Positions 650 to 58,553 of a DNA stretch of 64,000 nt are shown here, one piece after another; the stretch's first letter is position 1, and each line of letters begins with the position of its first letter. The DNA is from Sphaerodactylus townsendi (taxonomy: Eukaryota), in contig NC_059425.1 of NCBI RefSeq assembly GCF_021028975.2, forward strand, positions 74,152,001 to 74,216,000, given 5' to 3'. The position numbers and the translations under genes were made by a program. The notes beneath the pieces are model-generated. The model saw only the letters and a program-made list of their open reading frames with translations, was not told the origin of the DNA and ran no database searches.

Positions 650-1241
650 TAGCCTAAAAATGCGCCACCTGCAGGCCGAAAACTGAAAAAACACTAAAAT
701 TAGAAAACACACTCCAACGAACCTGAAAATTTTGCACCCTCCACTAGGGGGGGCACCCGGGGAATAGGGTACCCCATGTCCCTAGGCCAGGAGTAGGGAA
801 CCTTTAACACTCAAAGAGCCATTGGGACCCGTTTTCCATGGCAAAAGAAACACTTGGAGCCACAAATAATTTTTGACATTTAAAATAAAGATAACACTGT
901 ATATATTGGGGGTTTTTTACCTTTCACTCCGCTCATTCTGATAAGCGCATGGATACGTCCGCCCTGCTGCCTGCAGGGTGGGCAAGGATGGGGCCAGCAG
1001 CTCGGCCTCGCCAGCCGCCAGGAAAGCGCCCGCTCCGCTCAAATGGGGCGGGCGAGAGGGGAAGCCCGCAATGCGGCCCAGCCAGCCGTGGGCAGTTGGT
1101 GCACCTGCCCTGCTGCCTGCAGGGCGGGCAAGGATGGGGCCGGTGGCTCGGCTCGGGGAGCTGCAGTGCAAGGGCAGAAGAGCCGCATGCGGCTCTCGAG
1201 CCGCAGGTTCCCTACCCCTGCCCTGGGCAAATACGCCACTG
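650..1241. mobile_element. hAT-type MITE (related to 39-259) interrupted by a second hAT MITE
   Basis: 762-786 is the reverse complement of the subterminal motif at ~214-237; the end TACGCCACTG (1232-1241) is the complement of the CAGTGGCGTA TIR. Left boundary uncertain. Confidence 0.55.
788..1220. mobile_element. hAT MITE (CAGGGGTAGGGAACC TIR family)
   Basis: TIRs CAGGAGTAGGGAACCT / AGGTTCCCTACCCCTG; TSD CCCTAGGC / CCCTGGGC (7/8). Confidence 0.85.
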
Positions 1242-15253: not shown

Positions 15254-18200
15254 GGCCGTTTCCGCACGGAGGTGGAAACGGCTAGGTTGGCGCATTGCGC
15301 GCCAACCCGACGACGCTGGGACAGTCCACACAGACGGTCCTGGAAACAGCCGGGCAGCCGGCGCCACGGAGCGCCGGCGCCCGGCCAACCCGGCATGTCC
15401 CCGGGCCTCCGGCGCGTTGCCGAGGCCTGGGGATATGCCCCCCTGGCCCTGCGCGCCTGCTCCAGCAGCGCAGGGCAGGGGGGCGTGTCCCCAGGCCTCC
15501 GGCAACGCGCCGGACCAGGGACAAGGTAAGCGCCGGGTGGGGAGGTGTCGTGAAGCACGCCAAGCCGTTAAGCACCGGCAGCGGCTTTTCACGGGCGGTG
15601 TTTCCCCAACAAGAGCGCTTCCAAAGAGGCTGGGAAAACACCGGCTTCGCAGCTTAGCCGGGCAGCGAAGCGGCGGCGCAGCTACGATGCAGCTGTTCGC
15701 GCCTGGCCATGCGAATGCATTACTCCAGAAATCTTTGGTATAACACAGTCAACATTCAGTTCTTCGGTGAAGACATAAGTCCATTTATGCTTAATGCTTA
15801 AAAATTTCCGAAACTTTACCAAGACTGGCCTCGAGAGTCTCAGAGAAGAAACAATTAAAGGCGAACTTAATTTCTTCATGCTTTGGCATCCGCTTACAGC
15901 AAAATCCACCAGGTGAGGATTTAATTCCACCTGAGCTTATTTAAAATTTTTTTTTCCAGTTGAGGTGGTCTCCAGTGTTAGCCAAAGGTATTTACTCATA
16001 TTAACAAATTTGAGAAATTTATCTTCCCCAAAGGCTGGGAAATTAAGAGTATAGTGAGTTCCAATCCACAAAAAGGTGACAAAACCCGATCCAAAGAACT
16101 ATCGACCAGTAAGCTTAAAACATTAAATATGGCACTCAAAAATCTGACGGCAAGATTTTTTTATATCAAAAAAATTAGAAGATTGGGTTTATAGACAACG
16201 CCATCTAATATATCATCCATCATCAAGCAGGTTTTAAAAGAGGACAATCTACCATTGACCACTGTCAAAGCCTTTACAATCTGGCATTTTCAGGAATAGA
16301 AAGCCCTACACCAGAGCCTATATATGTGGCTTTTGTAGATCTGGCTAATGGGGCTTTTTACGATTCAATTGACAGAAACAGACTCTGAAGGTCAAAACTA
16401 GAGAAATTAAAAAAATGCGATCAAAGCGCTTTGTTATTCGCCTTCTTCGTGAATTACATACAGACACCCAGGCTAGGATTAGAGTTGGTATGATGGGTTC
16501 CCTAAACAAACAAGATATCAATTAAACGAGGTGTAAAGAAGCAAGGCTGTGTCCACTAAGCTCCACTACTTTTTTAATCTCTATATAAGCGATATAAGGT
16601 ACAAAGGTTATCCAAGGACCAGAATACATAGCCCCCTCTATTAACCAACTAGAAGAATTTCCATCCTGTTATGTAATGCAGATGGACATGGTCCTAATTT
16701 CTCAAAACCCGCATTGGGATTAAAAAAAGACTGCTCAATAAGCTTAGGTGAATGGTATTGCAAGGAGGAAGCACTCTCCATCAATTACTATCAAGAAACC
16801 AAAGCTCCTATGAGTATTTAGGAAAAAAAAACCGAAAAAAACACTATCCTGGATCGATACACAAAGGAATTCCTATAGGAGCAATGCGAAGCTCATTTAA
16901 ATATTCATAGGGAATTAACTTTTAGTGATACCTTTAAATTGGAGAAAAGTACACTTAGGAACTTTTAAGAATCCTCGGCTATAAAAATAATGAGGGGCAA
17001 TTATGAGATTCCTATTACTCAAAAGGTGGTTTGTCTTGTAGATCCAGCTGTCTATAAAACTGTTAGAAAGTAAGAGTCATCCTCACATACTGTTATATGG
17101 AATAGAAGTTTAGGGGCTGGAATGACCTTATACTCAAGACACTCCAGAATCCATTCCAGAACCTTTTTTAAGGCGGATTTTGACTGATGCTCAAAGGGAA
17201 CACCGGCTGCACTAATGAGGGGCAGAGTTAGGTTTACCATCCAATTGAATCCAACGTGCCCATCTTGCAATCTTGAAGGCCTGGAAAAAAACGACAGCTC
17301 TCAGATAATAAAACCTTTGGTCATCAGTCTTTTACTCTCCTGATGACAAAAAATAATAAACAGCTCTACTTGCTTTTGAAAAATTTGATCTCGGTACACT
17401 ATTCCAGATGATCTATTAAGAGTTTCCAAATGTCATCCAATGCTGAACTCCGAGGACTGGGTGTACAGAGAGAGAGATGCCAAGAATAAACAGACAATTA
17501 ATATGGATTCAGACAAAAAAAGAAACTGCTCCATGGTATAAAACTATTTAAAAAGAGATCATATTAGAGCTACATATCTGGCGAGCCACTACACTAACAA
17601 GAAATCTAAGAATGAAAGCTTATAACTTCTATTAGATTTCAATCAATGCCTTCAGCAGTGCTTAGTGGCAGATACACCTGACGGAAGTACCATTTTCCTC
17701 AAGCGCTTTTGTATCTGTGGAAAACTAAAGAGCCTGAGGATCTCTTCCACTTACATACTCTCCTGTCCTTTATATTCTGAAATAAAGGAAAAGGTTTTTT
17801 TAAGAGCCAATACCTACCTAGGACCCCAGCTTTTGTCCGATGATGAGAAACTGATTTTCTTATTATCGGATATTGATTTCTATGTTTCTTATAAGATGGC
17901 TCTCTTTGCCCTGGCGGCTAGGATACTACGAGCAAAGTATTTAAAGTGCTGTTTGAACTAATGTTGTAAAGTACTGGAGATTAACTTAGACTAGCTGAAG
18001 AAACTGCAAAAACATCTGACGTATTTGATGGGGCATTTTAATTTAGAGATTGAGAACACTAATAATTTATATTTTAATGTAAAACTAAATTATTGTTTTA
18101 ATTTAAATTATTGTTTTAACTAAGTTACTGTTTTAACTGCATGTATTTTTGTATTGTTATAGCCAATGGCTCAAACAATAAATACTTGACTTGACTTGAC

Positions 18201-30690: not shown

Positions 30691-33129
30691 GTTGAGGAAA
30701 TGCAAGGAAGCAACCATTTGTTGCAGAGCCATTTTCTGAAAAGGTGTAGTGAAAGGCCTGTAGCATCAGCAGATAACCAAGGAGGTTTTTCGAGATGTCC
30801 TATTGTGTCAAAGTAGTTCAGTGAGGTATGGTAATCAAGATCATGTCCATAGTTAATGAGGCTTCCAGATTCCATTCACTAGAGTAACTCATTCATTGAT
30901 TTAATCTTGCTAAACAGACCTTTTGCCTGTGGCCTGCTTCTAAGTGGGCACACTGCTACACACACAAAAATATGAGAGGTGGCTTCTGCCAATGTAGTTT
31001 AACAGGAAAATATTCTGAAATAATATATATTGGGGTGTCAAGGGCAAGGCTAACAGAACTCACCAAAGCATCTGGATCCCATGTTATTGACCCAGATTTT
31101 ACCTAAACCCATTGCTTTTATCTCTAAAATTCATAGTCACCCACTTACCCCTGCAAGATTGGTAATATAGCTTCCATCTGTCACAGAAAATATATCAGAA
31201 GAACCCTGCTCCCATTCACCAGTTTACTTGGGTTGGTCAATCTACTGGACAGAGGACAAGCCTGACTGGGCTATAAAGAGAGTCTGTTTGATAGGAAGTT
31301 GAGAAGATTCCAAACTTGTCAACTGTTACAATCTTATGAGCCATCTGACTACTAAATGTGGACTATAAACTTTTTACTTCATTAATGGCACAAAGATTAA
31401 GGAAATGCACAACAAGATTAATTCACAATAATCAGACATATTATGGAAAATATGAAAGTATAATGTAAAATATATGAAGGATAATGTTCGTTTTGTAGTT
31501 AACACAATAAAATTTGTGAAAACAGAAGAACAAAGCAGAATTTATTTTTTAGATGCAGAAAAAGCCTTTGATAATATAGCTTGGTCTTTTTTTTCTGAAG
31601 ATGCTTTGCAGCTCGAAGTTTATGAACTGGATACAAAGTATTTGTAAAAACAACAGGCAAAGATCTTAATAAATGGAGTCTTAATTGATGGATTTCAAAC
31701 TGAGAAAGAAACACATCAAGAATGTCCATTATCTGTACTCTTATTTATTCTTGTGCTATAAGTACTCGCTACTAATATCAGACAAAAATTAAAGGATGAA
31801 AAGTGGATGGAGAAGAGTTTAAAATGAAAGGCTAAGCTGATGATGTGGTACTGACAATTTCAAACCTATACCTATCATTGCAATATGTAATGGAACAAAC
31901 TGGAAAATATGCATCCTTCTTGAGCTATAAAATGAATAGGAAGACTAAAATGATTTTGAATTTTTTAACAAAGCAAGAAGAAGAAATTAGAAACATTACA
32001 GGTTGCAATGTGAGCTTACATCCAGTTAAATATTTGCGAATAAACATGATCAGACAAAATGAAACACTATTTAAAGATAATTATAAAATGACAAGGATAA
32101 TGATACAAGAGGATATTCAAAGACTGTTCAAAATAAAAACTTCTTGGTTAGACAGGATTTCTACCATAAAGTGAATATATCATCAAAGTAAAAAAAAATA
32201 TTACAAATGTTAAGTGTTTCAAATGGCAGAAACAGATAAACAAGTTTATATGGAACAACAAAAAACAAGAAACAGTTTCACACTTTTACAAGATGAAAAA
32301 AACAGAGAACTATCAGTAGCTAATATTACATTATATTATCAAGCAGCTAGTTTCAATTGCAGATTGGATTGAGAACCCAGAAAAGAAAGTAATAAAATTA
32401 GACATGACAGATTTAGAAGAAACATTATGCAATTGATTATGGACAGAACAATCAATGAGCAACCATATCATACAAAATGGAAGTCATGTAATCAGAGACG
32501 GATTGTTAAAAATTTTTGAAGTGACCCAAAAAAGAATTAGTCCTCCAATATCTCCACTACCATCATCTGTAGAGGCTAATTATAAGAAAACTAGCGTTAC
32601 CCGGCCACGCGTTGCTGTGGCTAATTGTTGTGAAATGGAAAAGGAGCAGTACCAGCAAATGAAAGGCAGATGCCAGCAGTACGTGCTCAAGGGAACACAG
32701 AGCCTGATACTATGTGATGTGATTGATATGTGTGACTGCATTCCTAGGACTTCTTTCTGGGTATATGGCAAAAAGGGACATGTCACTGGTTGTAGTCACA
32801 TAGTTCCAATGAAGTGAAGTTTTCGAACAGAGAGCTAGTAAGAGCAGAGCCACAGGTTGTGGCGAAGTGACGCAGGAGTGGAGGTGTGTAAAAGTTATGG
32901 AATGTAAGTGTCGAAGAAGCGAATGATGTGTTTGGGGTGAGGAAGGTGCCGTGGAGGGCTGACGTTGAATGGAGCATTGGTGTTCCTCCGCCAAGAACGT
33001 AGTTAAGGGGGGGTAGGATTCAAACCCCCCCCCCCTGCATGTCTGAAGCTCTGGCCCCTGTCGGAGGGTTTTTTCAGTTTTAAAGCATTTGGGGGGTTTT
33101 GGCCTGCAGGGGGCGCAGTTTTTAGGCTA

Positions 33130-35125
33130 TCGGGACCAAAATGTCAGGCTATTGTCAGGAGACATTCCTGATGATACCAGCCAAGTTTGGCGAAGTCTCG
33201 TTCAGGGGGTCCAAAGTTATGTACTCCCAGAGGGGGTGCCCCATCCCCCATTGTTTCCAATGGGAGCTAATAGTTGATCGGGCTACCCTTTTGAGGTTCC
33301 ATATCTTTGGACACCCTGAATCAAACTTCACTAAACCTAGGTGGTATCCTCAGGATAGTCTCCTTCTGATACTACCCAGGTTTGGTGAAGGTTGGTTCAG
33401 GGGATCCAAAGGGGGTGCACCCTCCCCCATTGTTTCCAATGGGAGCTAATAGTTGATAGGGCTACCCTTTTGAGGTTCCATAACTTTGGACACCCTGAAT
33501 CAAACTTCACTAAACCTAGGTGGTATCATCAGGATAGTCTCATTCTGATACTACCCAGGTTTGGTGAAGGTTGGTTCAGGGGATCCAAAGTTATGGACTC
33601 CCAAAAGGGGTGCCCCATCCCCCATTGTTTCCAATGGGAAGCTGTGGTTGACAGGGCTACCCTTTTCCAGGTTCCATAGCTTTTGGACACTCCTGAATTA
33701 AAACTTCACCCAAGCTAGTGAGTCATCATCAGGATAGTCTCCCTTCTGATACTACCCAGGTTTGGTGAAGGTTGGTTCAGGATCCAAAGAGTTATGGACT
33801 CCCAAGGGGGTGCCCCCCATCCCCCATTGTTTCCAATGGAAGCTAATAGTTGACAGGGCTACCCTTTTCAGGTTCCATAACTTTGGACACCCTGAATCAA
33901 ACTTCACTAAACCTAGGTGTCATCCTCAGGATAGTCTCCTTCTGATACTACCCAGGTTTGGTGAAGGTTGGTTCAGGGGATCCAAAGTTATGGACTCCCA
34001 AAAGGGGTGCCCCATCCCCCATTGTTTCCAATGGAAGCTAATAGTTGACAGGGCTACCCTTTTCAGGTTCCATAACTTTGGACACCCTGAATCAAACTTC
34101 ACTAAACCTAGGTGGTATCATCAGGATAGTCTCCTTCTGATACTACCCAGGTTTGGTGAAGGTTGGTTCAGGGGATCCAAAGTTATGGACTCCCAAAAGG
34201 GGTGCCCCATCCTCCATTGTTTCCAATGGAAGCTAATAGTTGACAGGGCTACCCTTTTGAGGTTCCATAACTTTGGACACCCTGAATCAAACTTCACTAA
34301 ACCTAGGTGGTATCATCAGGATAGTCTCCTTCTGATACTACCCAGGTTTGGTGAAGGTTGGTTCAGAGTTAAAGTTATGGACTCCCAAAAGGGGTGCCCC
34401 ATCCTCCATTGTTTCCAATGGAAGCTAATAGTTGACAGGGCTACCCTTTTGAGGTTCCATAACTTTGGACACCCTGAATCAAATGTCACTAAACCTAGGT
34501 GGTATCATCAGGATAGTCTCCTTCTGAGACTACCCATGTTTGGTGAAGGTTGGTTCAGGGGATCCAAAGGCATGGACTCCCAAAGGGAGTGGGCCATCTT
34601 CCATTGTTTCCAATCGGATGTAATAGAAGATGGGGGTACCGTTTTGAGGTTCTATATCTTTGGACACCCTGAATCAAATGTCACTAAACCTAGGTGGTAT
34701 CATCAGGATAGTCTCCTTCTGATACTACCCAGGTTTGGTGAAGGTTGGTTCAGAGGATCCAAAGTTACAGACTCCCAGAGGCAGTTCCCCATCTTCCAGT
34801 GTCTCCAGTGGGATATAATAGAAGATGGGGGTACCGTTTTGAGGTTTCATATCTTTGGACACCCTGAATCAAACCTCACTAAACCTAAGTGGTATCATCA
34901 GGATAATCTCCTTCTGATACTACCCCGGTTTGGTGAAGGTTGGTTCAGGGGGTCCAAAGTTATGGACTTTTAAAGGGGGTGCCCCATGTTCCATTGTTTC
35001 CAATGGGAGGTAATAGAAGATGGGGGTAAACCTTCGAAGATCCATAACCTTGGATCCCCTGAACCAAACTTCAGTAAACCTGGGCACTATCAGCAGGAGA
35101 GTCTCCTGAAGATACCATGAAAGTG
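33130..35125. repeat. Tandem array of ~10 copies of a 195-bp unit, each with an internal ~120-bp inverted repeat
   Basis: CCATAACTTTGG-like motif recurs at ~33299, 33478, 33674, 33875, 34070, 34265, 34457, 34651, 34846 and 35042; 65-aa periodicity in ORF 33762-34973. Confidence 0.95.
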
Positions 35126-35136
35126 TGGGGATGCAA

Positions 35137-35283
35137 GAGTAATGTGGAGCTTTGGCCCAAGTGGTTTTTACAAACAGGAACCTCAGAATTCAGGTTAAAT
35201 TGGCGTGCTTGCACTGTGCGTGAAAGAAGGGGGATTTGGGTTGCAGTTTGGGCAGTGGGGGTAAAGGTGGGTTGCCATCACTG
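35137..35283 (-). mobile_element. hAT MITE terminal fragment inside the Helitron
   Basis: Reverse complement CAGTGATGGC...TGCCCAAACTGCAACCCAAA...GCCAATTTAACCTGAATTCTGAGGTT aligns to the start of the 58032 MITE. Confidence 0.8.
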
Positions 35284-36673
35284 CTGTAGTGTGTCTCAAT
35301 ATGCCTCCCTGCAAACTGTATGGAGTGTTGGCATCCTCAGGCAAGTTGGTGTTGGTGGGTATAGAAATACCCCAAAGGAAAATGCAGGTTGCACTGCAGT
35401 GCTTCATAATCTCCATTCCTCATAATATGTGTGACATGTTTTTGTGTGAACAAAAGATCTGCAGCAAGTTTGCATAGGAAAGCAGAGTCTGCTAAGAGAG
35501 ATCGGAAAAGGGTGGCCATGTGGCGTGGTGTTCCTTCATGAGGGGAGGGTGGGGTGGTTTTAATGTTCATGGGTAGTCATCTCCATGTAACCCCAGTAAG
35601 GTGGAAGAAATGAAATAGCTGCAGTGAATGAGGACTGGAAAGGGTGGTGCCTTGGAGAGCTTCAGAAATGGTGGGCAGGTGTTGTTGTTTACCTTTTCGA
35701 GAGGATGGGGGGTTATGATGGCGGGCAGCAGAATAGGCAAGGTGGGTTTGCACAGAGACGGGTCGTTGAGGCAGCCGTGATGGGCAGCAGAATTGGCGGG
35801 TCCCCTGGGCGCTGAGGCGCTGTGCTGAGGCGGCGTGGAGGTGCCACAGACTTTATGAGGGAAAGTGGCTGATGAGGCGGATGGCAAAATCCGGAGGAAG
35901 GATGGCTGGTGGAGTAGGGTCGCAGGGTGGGGGTGGGGGTGGGGGGGCAGCGGGTGGCGATGCGGATGGGAGACTCGGGAGCTGGAGGCGGTGTGAGAGG
36001 CTGGTGGCGACGTGAGGCGCAGGAAGGAGAAGGCGAGGGTGCCGAAAGCAAGCTGTCAGAGGCTGCTGGCGTGAGAGCTGTTGTTTGGGCGGGAAGCGAC
36101 CAAGGGGGGAGGGAGCAGCGTGCGAGCTGTGCGTTGCGTATGAGAAGGGGAGGTTCCGTGCATGCCTATCGCAGGAGAGTGCAGCTGATGGCTGATTACG
36201 GCGAAGCATATGAGGAGGTGTTAAGTGGGAAGGGGGAAGATGCTGGCATGTCAGCTGTGTTTTGGGCTGGCAGGGAAGCGAAAGGTGGGAGGAGCCTGCG
36301 CGCCTCGCATTGCTTTTGCAGAGGGGATGAGGGAGAGTTTGGCTGGTGGTTGGGCATGCGCAGTTGGAGGTTTGGGGGGAAATCGCGTCCTATGGGGCAC
36401 AGGGAGGATTATTGTTGGGGGAAAGGAGCTGGAAACCTGGCAGCAGCCATGAGGGACGGTGTCAGGGAAATGCAGGGTGATGTGTGAAGGAATGTGGAAG
36501 GTGACCTGTCAGCAAGAAACGAACGGTTAGCTTTTTATATATATAGATGGTGGGGAACACTGACATTGGCAATATGATAGATGTTCAAGGGGAAACTACG
36601 TCTTGGTCAAAAATGAAGGATGAAGGCAAAAAAATACAATGGCTATTATACTTTCAGTTAGTTTCCAGACTAA

Positions 36674-37144
36674 GGCCATTTCCGCACGGCCATGCTGTGT
36701 GGGTGCGTTGGCATAAATGACGCCGACGCACCCGCCCAGGACTGTTCACATGGACGGTCCCAGTAGGGGTGGGGAAGATGGCACAGCCTGTGCAGAGGCT
36801 GTGCCGTCCCCCGAATGCCTTACCATCCCCGCTGGCCTTCCGGCATGTCGCACAGGCCAGGGGACACACCCCCTGCCCTGCGCGACAGCTCTGGAGTCGC
36901 AGGGCAGGAGGGCGTGTCCCCTGGCCTGTGCAACGTGCCTGAAGGCCGGAGGAGACGGTAAGGCATTCGGGAAAGGGGGTGAAATGGTGCCTTCCAGCAG
37001 CTGCCGTTCACACGGCAGCGGTTGGAAGACACTGCTTCCGAAAAACCTAGCTCAGGGGGTTTGCAGTTAACGCAACAGTTAATAATTAGCGCAATGCAGC
37101 AGTGGCGGCCATGTGAACCCCTCCCCAGGGATGCGGAAAGGGCC
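36674..37144. mobile_element. CpG-rich Harbinger-like MITE
   Basis: GGCCATTTCCGCAC ... TGCGGAAAGGGCC; flanks TAA/AAA; internal homology to 53022-53546 in opposite orientation. Confidence 0.85.
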
Positions 37145-37514: not shown

Positions 37515-38040
37515 CATACATACATAGTTTATTTACGGTCATTGACCAGCAAGATCCAAAAGAATTAAAATAATAAAATTTACAGATATAACAAATATAC
37601 AGATTAAAACAGTTAACAAAATACAGATAATAGACCTCAGGAACTCAGAACATCAGCTCAAGATAATGAGTGAAAGGTCAGTCTAATAATAATTAATAAT
37701 AAGGATTAGCTGGCAAAGCCAGTAGTGCTCTGTCGGGCCTTCCTGATTTTACTTGATATCCAGGCATACTTGGCAACAGAATACATTAGATTTTTATTGG
37801 TATCTGATAACAGTATTTTAACCTTTTCTTTCTTAGCCAAAGGAGTGTTTGTCTGGTCAAAGGACAGAAGCATCCAACGTATCTCATCATAGTATGAGCA
37901 TTCAAATAATATATGTTCCGAGTTTTCAACACCTCCTATTTGACAACTGCAAATTCTGCCCTCAGTTGGTACTTTGTTATAAATCCCGTTGGTATAGTTA
38001 GACGAAAGGGCGTTGTAACGGAGTAGGCTGGTGCTTAAGC
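37515..38040 (-). mobile_element. RTE-X-like LINE 3' fragment
   Basis: RICSCQIGGVENSEHILFECSYYDEIR zinc-knuckle region; (TATG)n tail at ~37515-37527. Confidence 0.7.
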
Positions 38041-38400
38041 CTTCCCTTCTGTGCCATTTTTTTACCTGAAATGGTCCTCCTCTTTCCCACCACACAAACT
38101 GATAAAGGGACTGATAAAGAACCCAACACTTCTTTGCTTTTCACTGCACTCCCAATCTGAACTGAGCTTGCATGCACCTGCTATTTAAAGGAAAAAAGAC
38201 TGCCAGGAGCTCCATTCACAGAACTCTCAGAATCATATTTTGTTTGGCCCTAGGGGAAAAGATTATGTTTGGAGATTAAATTTGTGGTCTTGGAACTGTT
38301 GAATTTCAAGAAGCAGAGGCTTTTCAAAACTAGTCTGGAGTGTGGTGAGCTTGCTGCATACTGGAGTTTTCGCTGATTCTTCCTTGGTATTTAATACTGC

Positions 38401-46531: not shown

Positions 46532-47067
46532 GGCCGTTTCCACACGGGCCATTAACAGCGCCCTGGGGACGGCAAAAACGCTGTCCCCAGGGAGCTGTTC
46601 GCCCGAGGGGTGCAGCTGCTGCGCAGCCGCGCCGCCCTCGTTTGCCTCGGTATTGCTGAAGCTGCTGTTTACAACCTCGCTTCCCCAGCGAGGTTTTCGG
46701 AAAACGGCGGCTTCGAGCCGCTGCCGTGCGAATGGCAGCAGCTCAAAGGCGCCCTCCCTCCCCCTCTCCACTGTTCACCTACCGTGTCTGTGGCCGTCCA
46801 GCATGTCGCCGAGGCCTGGGAACACGCCCCCCTGCCCTGTGATGCCGGAGCAGTCGCGCAGGGCAGGGGGGCATGTCCCCAGGCCTCGGCAATGCGCCAG
46901 ATGGCCACAGACACGGCAGGTCGGCTGGGTGATGGCACTCCGCGGTGCCGTCTTCCCGGCTGTTTCTGGGACCGATGCGATCGCGAAACGGTCCCAGGGG
47001 TTAATTCGGTTAATGGGATACGCCCGACCCAACCCTGACTCGTCAAGCTCATCGCGCGGAAACAGCC
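46532..47067. mobile_element. CpG-rich Harbinger-like MITE
   Basis: GGCCGTTTCCACAC ... GCGGAAACAGCC; flanks ACC/ACG. Confidence 0.85.
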
Positions 47068-47225
47068 ACGTTAGATGTTTTGGGTCATGCCATGGAGGAA
47101 TATAAAAGGCATTTTATCAGCTTCTGCAACTTTACGTTATAGCAAGATTACTGTCCTGTCTCATAACTTTTTAGCTAGCAAAGCATTAGCTATCACACTT
47201 TCATGTAAAAACGACATATAAATAT

Positions 47226-47440
47226 TTGGGTGCTGTGTGGTTTCCGGGCTGTATGGCCGTGTTCTAGCAGCATTCTCTCCTGACGTTTCGCCTGCATCTG
47301 TGGCTGGCATCTTCAGAGGATCTGAATGCCAGCCACAGATGCAGGCGAAACGTCAGGAGAGAATGCTGCTAGAACACGGCCATACAGCCCAGAAACCACA
47401 CAGCACCCAAGTGATTCCGGCCATGAAAACCTTTCACAAT
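47226..47440. mobile_element. Penelope-like element terminal remnant (inverted pseudo-LTR pair)
   Basis: ~90-bp arms form an inverted repeat over 47226-47410; perfect 12-bp TSD ACATATAAATAT (47214-47225 / 47441-47452). Confidence 0.85.
47278..47321 (-). ncRNA. Minimal type I hammerhead ribozyme motif
   Basis: Minus strand UCCU-CUGAAGA-U-GCC...GGC-GAAAC-GUC-AGGA: conserved CUGANGA/GAAA core, stem II, GUC cleavage triplet and stem I UCCU/AGGA. Confidence 0.8.
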
Positions 47441-47689
47441 ACATATAAATATGTTTGCTTTCTGCCAGTGTTCAGGATTTCCACACTGTTTTCCAAAATA
47501 AAAGAATTCTTACTAGCATCACAGCAGCTTGCTTTTCCTGCTAGAAGAATATAGTATAAATATAGGAGGTTTTAAAAATGATTACTCAGCAAGGCAGAGA
47601 ATGCATCTGGTGATTATGGGGCTTTTGGCAAAGCAGCCAGGAAAAGAACTTGGAGATGCTGCTGCAGAGGCAGGGCTGAGGGTGGGATA

Positions 47690-52789: not shown

Positions 52790-53765
52790 TGTTGCCTTGT
52801 TTGCATGCAGTGGCAGCAGAAGCAGCAGGGAATTCTGGGAAACTGCACAAACCTTCTAAAGGTGACAGTTAAAATCTGTTGGTAGTGTTCTGTTCCCTCA
52901 CTAGCTCACTAACTTGTTCCCTGACTGAGTGAGTGAAAGAAAGATGTTCTCTGTACTGATGTAAACCAAATGCTATGTAAAAGTGCTCTGACTAAAAGAT
53001 ATTGTATCGCAACCAAACTGAGGCCTTTTCCGCACAGGCCAAAAACAGCGCCCTGGGGACGGCAAAAACGCCGTCCCCAGGGAGCTGTTCGCAAGGGGGG
53101 CACAGCTGCTTCGCAGCCGCGCCACCCTCGCTCCTCCCCAGCGGCGCGAAGCTGCTGTTTCCCAACCTTGCTCCCCGAGCGAGGTTTTTGGGAAACGGCG
53201 GCTTCCAACCGCTGCCGTGCGAACGGCAGCGGCTGGAAGGCACCATCCCTCCCCCCTTTCCCAAACGACCTACCTTCCCTGTGGCCGTCCGGCACGTCGC
53301 CAAGGCCTGGGGACATGCCCCCCTGCCCTGCAACTCTGGAGCGGTCGTGCAGGGCAGGGGTGTGTGTCCCCTGGCCTCGGCGACGCGCCTATCGGTCGCA
53401 GGGAAGGTAGGTCGATCGGGCGATGGTGCAGCGCGGCGCCGTCTTCCCGGTAGTTTCCGGGACTGTTCATGCGGATGGTCCAGCGGGGGTTGTGTCGGCG
53501 TCATGTACGCCGACCCGACCCCTAGCGTGGCTGTGCGGAAACAGCCTGTAACAAACTATGAGCTGTGCATGTAACTTTGTTAATATATATACTATATGTT
53601 TTCTCTCTCAGTTAAGTAAAGTTCTCCTTGTGTTTATGAACTTCTGAGGTAAAACAGCTGGTCTTTTGAGAGATAACTATTCTTTGATGTGCCGCACAAT
53701 CCACATTTCTGCTCATTACTCTGCTTGAAAGGATTATATATACTAAATATACCTGTTGCCCTTCA
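52790..53765 (+). mobile_element. Copia LTR copy interrupted by a MITE
   Basis: Colinear with ~23960-24432 apart from the 53022-53546 insertion. Confidence 0.85.
53022..53546. mobile_element. CpG-rich Harbinger-like MITE
   Basis: GGCCTTTTCCGCAC ... GTGCGGAAACAGCC; flanks TGA/TGT; the empty site in the paralogous LTR (24189-24208) has a single TGT. Confidence 0.9.
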
Positions 53766-57990: not shown

Positions 57991-58031
57991 AAACAGGGCA
58001 TAGATGCTCTGATGCTGCCTACCAGTTAGGG

Positions 58032-58553
58032 CAGTGATAGCGAACCTTTTCGAGACTGAGTGCCCAAATTGCAACCCAAAACCCACTTATTTATCGCAAA
58101 GTACCAACACAGCAATTTAACCCGAATACTGAGGTTTCAGTTTTTAAAAAACGGTTTGCTCCAAGGCGTGCATTACTCAGGAGTAAGCTTGGTGGTAGTC
58201 GGTGGCTTTGCTTTGAAGCAACCGTGCAACTCTTCCAACGGGTGAATCACAACCCTAGGAGGGTTTACTCAGAAGCAAGCCCCATTGCCAGCAACCGAGT
58301 TTACTCCCAGGTAAAGGATTGCACTTTAATTCTTTGCATTAAAATCAGTGGGGTTTAACAGCACTTAACAGGGTTACCTACACTGCTTCCCCAAAACTAG
58401 GTCTTAGGTTTAATGCTAATAATCGAGCCCAGCAGCCTAGGCCAGCCTAGATGTGTGTGTGTGGGGGGGGGGGGGGGACTCTATTTGCGCATGCCCACAG
58501 AGGGGGCTCTGAGTGCCACCTCTGGCACCCATGCCATAGGTTCGCCACCACTG
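58032..58553. mobile_element. hAT MITE
   Basis: CAGTGATAGCGAACCT ... AGGTTCGCCACCACTG; perfect TSD AGTTAGGG. Confidence 0.9.

What the first reader, a model, noticed from the sequence alone, without database searches (positions are those of the whole stretch)
32591..36547. Complete non-autonomous Helitron carrying an internal satellite array
Seen: canonical Helitron ends on the minus strand (A|TC...hairpin...CTAG|T), no TSD, insertion into an L1, and about half of the element occupied by a 195-bp tandem array. No RepHel coding sequence was recognisable. Established: Helitrons with central tandem repeats (e.g. Drosophila DINE-TR elements) seed satellite DNA. Inference: this is a reptilian Helitron family that disperses a satellite monomer and may be undescribed.
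Basis: partly seen in the sequence, partly recalled or inferred. Interest (0 to 1): 0.8.

Follow-up and report, generated by a model that had tools for sequence, protein, structure and literature searches.

The report
Low-copy Helitron carrying an amplified palindromic repeat
This is a real but ordinary non-coding rolling-circle transposon (Helitron) sitting in an old L1; its 195-bp array is a local expansion of a far more abundant palindromic repeat, so the transposon is a passenger carrier and not the main spreader of that repeat.

Summary
Window 32591-36547 (minus strand) is one 3,957-bp insert in a decayed L1 ORF2. It has a 5' TC end, a hairpin plus CTAG at the 3' end, A|T flanks, no TSD, no TIR and no recognisable coding sequence. 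About 10 units of a 195-bp repeat fill half of it.

Contigs of four related taxa show that both ends are true repeat-family boundaries. Earlier notes of this scan call the genome a gecko; I did not check that.

- The composite is single-copy or low-copy.
- Only the last 219 bp (32591-32809) belong to a high-copy family.
- Copies of that module in other contigs have different interiors.
- The monomer belongs to a hyper-abundant family whose depth exceeds the Helitron end by roughly 5- to 100-fold.
- The array's edge units match that family best, and the core units are a local amplification.
- Each 195-bp unit is an inverted dimer of about 97 bp.

One new point: a second, internal terminator-like hairpin plus CTAG lies 244 bp upstream of the real end. 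This suggests end-bypass or a chimeric 3' end.

The scan has 13 Helitron notes in this genome, none shown to be this family. I found no empty site and could not test whether the two ends co-occur elsewhere. It is a new member of a known kind, of modest interest.

The parts
36524..36547 (-). Helitron 5' terminus (TC..., A-T-rich), preceded by A
   Evidence: Read directly. Other-copy contigs lose homology at 36548/36549 (X6 record 31, X5 record 24).
35291..36523 (-). 5' body: non-coding and low-copy. Its sense strand is C-rich and G-poor (C 0.38-0.52, G 0.14-0.16).
   Evidence: Depth is about 1-4 times single copy. Composition. No Pfam hits.
35141..35290 (.). Captured fragment of another interspersed repeat. 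The BLAST core 35165-35254 is 81% identical to window 58150-58061.
   Evidence: The X1 loose end at 35220 matches the 58-kb copy.
33130..35125 (.). Tandem array of about 10 units of 195 bp. Each unit is a ~97-bp half plus its inverted complement.
   Evidence: fold z = -15. CpG o/e 0.08 and GC skew 0. Hyper-abundant in four taxa.
33065..33129 (.). Non-palindromic 'head' of the abundant repeat family. 33096-33129 is 91% identical to window 683-650.
   Evidence: Loose ends at 33097 and 33129 in all four runs.
32864..33064 (-). Low-copy linker between the array and the 3' region
   Evidence: Single-copy contigs X2 records 11 and 12.
32835..32863 (-). Internal second terminator-like motif: 6-bp hairpin GCCACA/TGTGGC, 10-nt spacer, CTAG, followed by C
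   Evidence: the pattern occurs only twice in the window, both times in this element, against 0.02 expected. Searches show similarity to the terminal hairpin region.
32591..32809 (-). High-copy 3' module shared with a large Helitron family. It includes the terminal hairpin and CTAG (32591-32621).
   Evidence: Depth 45k-207k against about 80. X5 record 18 and X6 records 25 and 26 match only this span. Hairpin fold.
31000..32590 (+). Decayed L1 ORF2 (RT through the C-terminal part), left flank of the insertion
   Evidence: RT motifs. Homologues. Alignment to P0012.
36548..36670 (+). Continuation of the same L1 ORF2, right flank
   Evidence: BLASTP to P0012 residues 302-335, E 9e-05. 0 of 500 shuffles score as well.

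Best explanation
A chimeric, non-autonomous canonical Helitron, 3,957 bp on the minus strand, was mobilised in trans by a RepHel enzyme encoded elsewhere. It integrated as one unit between A and T inside an old L1 ORF2.

Its cargo is a patchwork:
- a C-rich, low-copy 5' body;
- a fragment of another interspersed repeat;
- one copy of a hyper-abundant palindromic repeat that has been amplified locally into about 10 units of 195 bp, most likely by slippage or unequal exchange favoured by the unit's two palindromes;
- a 3' region with two terminators in tandem.

Transfer probably ran past the internal hairpin+CTAG at 32835 and stopped at the 3' module of an abundant Helitron family at 32591. That would be end-bypass or a chimeric 3' end. 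The Helitron is a carrier of the repeat in at most a handful of copies, not the agent that spread the monomer through the genome.

Shown: the anatomy, the two family boundaries, L1 colinearity, the relative abundances and the structure of the array. Inferred: trans-mobilisation, bypass and the order of events.
For: - Ends, A|T flanks, no TSD, no TIR.
- Both ends are boundaries of repeat families in other taxa, with unrelated flanks beyond: (X5 records 18 and 24; X6 records 25 and 31). X5 record 19 begins exactly at 32590.
- One insert in a colinear L1.
- No coding capacity.
- Body at single-copy depth, 3' module high-copy, monomer far higher: table 2.
- Edge units are closest to the abundant family, and the two central units are 99% identical.
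- Inverted-dimer structure of the unit.
- Second terminator-like motif, found only in this element.
- Mosaic cargo.
- Contigs across or next to the array/body junctions exist in other taxa: an X5 contig around 35135-35164 and X6 record 27 at 32952-33126. So the repeat was already in the element before those copies or species diverged.
- Helitron capture of tandem repeats and end-bypass are established: PMC12628747 and Grabundzija 2016, cited there.
Against: - No empty site was seen, either paralogous or orthologous. The window has no second L1 of this family. No 32590>36548 joint was among the 15 joints listed; 552 were not shown.
- Co-occurrence of the two ends in another copy could not be shown from short contigs.
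- Summed contig depth is only a rough proxy for copy number. How multi-mapping contigs were placed is unknown, so the monomer:terminus ratio lies anywhere between about 5 and about 100.
- The internal CTAG is followed by C, not T, and family homology starts 25 nt after it. The bypass story is therefore not clean.
- No autonomous partner was examined.
Confidence: 0.68

Rival explanations
1. This is a DINE-TR-like Helitron family whose members regularly carry the 195-bp array and have spread the monomer through the genome, seeding a satellite.
For: The array lies inside intact Helitron ends. If multi-mapping contigs were laid at every unit, the monomer:3'-module depth ratio could be as low as about 5-25. 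That would be compatible with about 10 units per element. Such families are known elsewhere (PMC7492417; PMC12628747).
Against: The sequences that link the ends to the array are single-copy in the source species. Three other copies of the 3' module break homology at 32809, and two of them show about 530 nt of unrelated interior without monomers. The abundant family resembles the array's edge units and includes a non-palindromic head found elsewhere in the window without Helitron ends. Many 'opposite strands' joints point to a free foldback or interspersed organisation.
Confidence: 0.12
2. Post-insertion nesting. The Helitron landed in the L1 without the repeat. A copy of the abundant palindromic element inserted into it later and expanded in place, so the array was never mobilised by a Helitron.
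For: The array differs sharply from the rest of the element in composition: CpG o/e 0.08 against 0.55, and GC skew 0 against +0.3 to +0.45. It belongs to an independently abundant family.
Against: No TSD or clean insertion boundaries were found around 33065-35140. Junction-spanning contigs exist in two other taxa. In X5 the 3' region contig starts exactly at the terminus, and the element's contigs lie at similar depth (71-165), which hints at several copies carrying the same interior. None of this is decisive.
Confidence: 0.15
3. Not a Helitron. This is a block of mixed repeats placed in the L1 by another route, such as DNA repair filler or segmental insertion, and its ends resemble Helitron ends by chance.
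For: Generic hairpin+CTRR motifs are frequent, about 50 in the window. The 70-nt 3' fold is not better than shuffles, z = 0.35. No RepHel, no empty site and no second full copy were seen.
Against: Both ends coincide to within 1-2 nt with the boundaries of repeat families in other taxa. TC, CTAG, the hairpin spacing, A|T flanks, the lack of TSD and the lack of TIR all hold together. The specific terminator motif recurs inside the element on the same strand.
Confidence: 0.05

Closest known systems
Canonical (Helitron1-type) non-autonomous animal Helitrons with captured host DNA, such as the bat Helibat/HelibatN families (Thomas & Pritham 2015; Grabundzija et al. 2016, cited in PMC12628747)
   Same: 5' TC, 3' hairpin plus CTAG, A|T insertion without TSD, no TIR, mosaic non-coding cargo. 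The 3' end is shared by a large family while the interior varies. There is also a possible terminator bypass.
   Different: No autonomous partner or sibling copy could be examined. Two terminator-like motifs lie in tandem. Half of the cargo is a tandemised palindromic repeat.
DINE-1 / DINE-TR1 of Drosophila and Cg_HINE of the Pacific oyster: non-autonomous Helentrons with central satellite-like arrays (PMC7492417; Dias 2015 and Thomas 2014, cited in PMC12628747)
   Same: A rolling-circle element with a central array of about 150-200-bp units between conserved ends.
   Different: Those are Helentron/Helitron2-type elements with high copy numbers, and the array is a family-wide feature. Here the ends are Helitron1-type, the composite is low-copy, and the monomer family is much more abundant than the element.
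Foldback or MITE-derived tandem arrays, such as Tetris in Drosophila virilis (Dias 2014, cited in PMC12628747)
   Same: The repeat unit is built from long inverted arms. It occurs in direct and inverted arrangements and is prone to tandem amplification.
   Different: No terminal structure, TSD or transposase link of the abundant gecko family was established here.
SINE-derived satellites of squamates, including geckos (PMC10702118)
   Same: Short dispersed tandem arrays that arise from an interspersed repeat in gecko genomes.
   Different: Those units are 139-151 nt and derive from tRNA-related Squam SINEs. This unit is 195 bp and palindromic, with no tRNA-like part.

Membership tests
Canonical Helitron (Helitron1 type) | 5' terminus TC | tested here: met
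   TCTATATA... at 36547 on the minus strand. Family homology ends at 36548/36549 in other copies.
Canonical Helitron (Helitron1 type) | 3' terminus CTRR with a short GC-rich hairpin about 10 nt upstream | tested here: met
   The stem GCCAC..GTGGC (7 bp with one bulge) is followed by 9 nt and CTAG at 32591. Family homology ends at 32589 in other copies.
Canonical Helitron (Helitron1 type) | Insertion between A and T without target-site duplication | tested here: met
   The flanks read ...AAGAAAA | TGGTGG... with no shared bases. The L1 flanks are colinear and in frame.
Canonical Helitron (Helitron1 type) | No terminal inverted repeats | tested here: met
   First 80 nt against the reverse complement of the last 80 nt: score 6, and 440 of 500 shuffles score as well.
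Canonical Helitron (Helitron1 type) | Several genomic copies that share both termini | tested here: inconclusive
   Each terminus on its own is a family boundary. The short contigs cannot link the two ends. The window holds no second copy.
Canonical Helitron (Helitron1 type) | Empty site in a paralogous or orthologous locus | tested here: inconclusive
   No paralogous L1 in the window. No 32590>36548 joint among those listed, with 552 not shown.
Canonical Helitron (Helitron1 type) | Autonomous RepHel-encoding partner with matching ends in the same genome | not testable with these tools
   The source genome cannot be searched. The element itself has no Rep or helicase domain.
DINE-TR / HINE-like array-carrying rolling-circle family | The central array is a constant feature of a multi-copy family with conserved ends | tested here: not met
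   The array-flanking body is single-copy in X2. Other copies of the 3' module have unrelated interiors.
DINE-TR / HINE-like array-carrying rolling-circle family | Helentron-type ends (T|T target, subterminal inverted repeats) | tested here: not met
   A|T target and no inverted termini.
Satellite DNA | Long free-standing arrays of the monomer | not testable with these tools
   Contigs show very high abundance and both direct and inverted joints. They cannot show array length.

The most novel reading that the evidence does not exclude
A small gecko Helitron subfamily picked up one copy of a hyper-abundant foldback-like repeat, possibly undescribed. It tandemised the repeat and moved the array to a few new loci. 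That would be a vertebrate example of a rolling-circle element seeding satellite-like arrays from a palindromic interspersed repeat.
Probability: 0.2. Interest if true: 0.5.

Novelty: new member of a known kind. Interest (0 to 1): 0.3.

Why it matters
This is a clean, fully delimited example of a chimeric Helitron in a reptile. It carries tandem terminators and a cargo that includes a tandemised palindromic repeat. It illustrates how rolling-circle elements shuffle and carry other repeats. It does not show a new mechanism, and it does not show that Helitrons created or spread this repeat. The more useful lead for repeat annotation is the repeat itself: a roughly 195-bp inverted-dimer family present in very high copy number in at least four related taxa.

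Tried and rejected
- **Second copies in the window.** I looked for either end, the L1 family or the empty-site junction and found none.
- **Metagenome scans.** Exact-pattern scans for the 3' terminus and for the monomer core found nothing.
- **Earlier scan findings.** Look-ups by sequence and by relatives were blank.
- **Protein word searches.** I searched with the ORF over the 3' module and with the ORF over the first monomer, hoping to reach other copies through predicted proteins. No candidates came back.
- **The 403-aa ORF through the array.** The period is 65 codons. The only family over Pfam's cut-off is DUF7684, at 27.4 bits against a cut-off of 26. No single stretch passes, and one monomer alone hits nothing. 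I rejected it as an artefact of summing over repeats.
- **Hammerhead or retrozyme idea.** A CTGATGA box lies in the arms, but Rfam gave no hammerhead. It gave only sub-threshold matches to miRNA-hairpin models, which reflect the hairpin shape. Rejected.
- **SINE origin of the monomer.** There is no tRNA-like part. Published gecko SINE-derived satellites have 139-151-nt units (PMC10702118). Not supported.
- **Literature.** Searches for Helitrons with satellites in lizards or geckos found nothing specific.
Full report
**What is there**

On the minus strand the stretch 36547>32591 begins with TC followed by an A-T-rich run. It ends with a short GC-rich hairpin (stem GCCAC/GTGGC extended to 7 bp with one bulge), nine bases and CTAG. 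The base before the 5' end is A and the base after the 3' end is T. The flanks share no duplicated bases. The first and last 80 nt show no inverted complementarity: 440 of 500 shuffles score as well. None of the ORFs of 60 codons or more on either strand hits Pfam, so there is no Rep or helicase remnant.

**The host site**

The left flank is a decayed L1 ORF2 on the + strand, with readable RT motifs. A 109-aa piece of it finds L1-type ORF2 fragments among 1.8 billion proteins. One of these is P0012, 452 aa, running from the RT C-terminus to the CCHC motif. The last 51 codons before the insert align to P0012 residues 239-287; 7 of 500 shuffles score as well. The first codons after the insert align from residue 302, with right-flank residue 10 at that point; BLASTP gives E 9e-05 and 0 of 500 shuffles score as well. 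The reading frame also stays open across the a|tg join. The two flanks are therefore neighbours in the L1, and the 3,957 bp are one insert with no sizeable target deletion.

**The array**

TRF reports a 195-bp period over 33406-35107: 8.7 copies at 89% matches. Anchoring on a conserved 20-mer gives ten units over 33186-35123 plus a partial leading unit from 33130, which is half of the element. Pairwise identity runs from 72% to 99%. The two central units are 99% identical, and the last unit is the most divergent.

Each period has two symmetry centres, near 34129 and 34227. It is therefore a half-unit of about 97 bp followed by its inverted complement, with arms 73-78% complementary. As single-stranded DNA it folds far better than shuffles, z = -15. 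This agrees with the scan's other note on this stretch (s1-753590).

The array also differs from the rest of the element in composition. Its CpG o/e is 0.08 against 0.53-0.56, and its GC skew is 0.00 against +0.29 to +0.45 on the window's + strand.

**Evidence from other genomes**

One read-laying run was available. It used Logan contigs of four runs from four coded organisms. Earlier follow-up notes of this scan call the genome a gecko; I did not verify that.

- Run X2 matches the window with 0-1 differences across both junctions (records 10 and 16), so it is probably the source species. Its single-copy contig depth is about 64-91.
- The Helitron body (32785-32961 and 35263-36501) lies at 76-316, which is one to a few copies.
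- The last 219 bp (32591-32809) lie at 45,000-207,000.
- The array bins lie at 0.3-5.2 million.
- Contigs of other copies match 32589-32809 only. X5 record 18 and X6 record 25 both carry unrelated sequence on both sides. X6 record 26 runs 32652-32809 and ends there.
- Contigs of other copies of the 5' region stop at 36548 (X6 record 31, with 29 further unmatched letters) and at 36549 (X5 record 24, with 293 further unmatched letters).
- X5 record 19 begins exactly at 32590.

Both proposed termini are thus real boundaries of repeat families, to within one or two bases, in different flanks and different taxa. This matters more than the anatomy, because generic hairpin+CTRR motifs occur about fifty times in the window.

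**Why the 'satellite-dispersing family' reading fails**

- The sequences that link the ends to the array are single-copy in the source species.
- All three contigs of other 3'-module copies lose homology at the same point, 32809. Two of them carry about 530 nt of interior that matches nothing in this element, although the array would start about 300 nt inward here.
- The first and last array units have the highest depth (4.6 and 5.2 million in X2) although they are the least like the array core. The loose-end consensus of the abundant copies also agrees with the variant seen in units 8-10 and not with the core units.
- The abundant family includes a non-palindromic head (33097-33129). That head recurs at window 683-650 without any Helitron end.
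- Many joints are between opposite strands. Some joints run from the first unit straight to the last, although the tool marks the letters in between as not known.

The simplest reading is that one copy of a very abundant interspersed palindromic repeat lies in the cargo and has been amplified locally.

Summed contig depth is a poor copy-number measure, and I do not know how multi-mapping contigs were placed. The monomer:terminus ratio could therefore be anywhere from about 5 to about 100.

**Further anatomy found here**

- The specific terminator pattern GCCAC...GTGGC...CTAG occurs exactly twice in the 64-kb window, against 0.02 expected. Both occurrences are on the minus strand of this element, 244 bp apart. 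The internal one (32863-32835) has a 6-bp stem, a 3-nt loop and a 10-nt spacer, is followed by C, and resembles the terminal one in its context. The high-copy module begins 25 nt after it. This looks like a bypassed terminator or a chimeric 3' end. Both are known behaviours of Helitrons (PMC12628747, which cites Grabundzija 2016). The C after CTAG and the 25-nt gap keep this an inference.
- Next to the array, 35165-35254 is 81% identical to another interspersed repeat at 58150-58061. The cargo is therefore a patchwork.
- The 1.4-kb 5' body is strongly C-rich and G-poor on the Helitron's sense strand, with C up to 0.52 and G about 0.15. I did not pursue it.

**Timing**

Contigs that cross or abut the array/body junctions exist in other taxa. 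Examples are an X5 contig around 35097-35209 with a 10-nt insertion, and X6 record 27 at 32952-33126. In X5 the element's contigs lie at similar depth, 71-165, and the 3' contig starts at the terminus. This hints at a few copies with the same interior. The repeat was therefore probably on board before those copies or species diverged. Orthology and paralogy cannot be told apart here, so post-insertion nesting remains a rival.

**Comparison with what is known**

The element meets every structural criterion of a canonical Helitron that I could test. Shared-ends copies and an empty site were inconclusive, and an autonomous partner was not testable. It does not meet the criteria of DINE-TR or HINE-like array carriers: those have Helentron ends and a family-wide array (PMC7492417; PMC12628747). 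The repeat unit works more like foldback-derived arrays such as Tetris (cited in PMC12628747) than like the SINE-derived satellites reported in geckos (PMC10702118). It has no tRNA-like part and no hammerhead.

**Verdict**

This is a new member of a known kind, of modest interest.

Noticed in passing
window 36671-37130 (also 53173-53390, 46687-46906, 15398-15511): A GC-rich repeat of about 460 bp is inserted in the same L1, 123 bp from the Helitron. It is internally palindromic: 36810-36971 is 84% self-complementary. It has high contig depth (83k-515k in X2) and three more copies in the window. One of those copies lies near the Penelope-like foldback noted by the scan at 47214-47452.
   Followed up: partly
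window 35126-36547 and 32591-33096, minus strand: The non-array parts of the Helitron are strongly C-rich and G-poor on the element's sense strand: C 0.38-0.52, G 0.14-0.16, GC skew +0.29 to +0.45 on the window's + strand. The array has no skew. It may be a family trait and not decay.
   Followed up: partly
window 33097-35140; window 650-830 (minus strand): The 195-bp unit belongs to a hyper-abundant repeat family. About 131,000 contigs were laid in run X2 alone, and the family is present in all four taxa. It consists of long inverted arms plus a non-palindromic T-rich head. Its full structure, termini and class (foldback, MITE or satellite) are not established.
   Followed up: partly
window 58020-58440 (minus strand) and 35141-35290: A SINE-like interspersed repeat at about 58 kb has a fragment inside the Helitron cargo, directly next to the array. 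The X1 loose end at 35220 matches the 58-kb copy.
   Followed up: no
window 37706-38095 (minus strand): A 129-aa ORF has a weak zf-RVT (reverse-transcriptase zinc-binding) match, E 0.19. It is probably the tail of another non-LTR retrotransposon in the opposite orientation.
   Followed up: no
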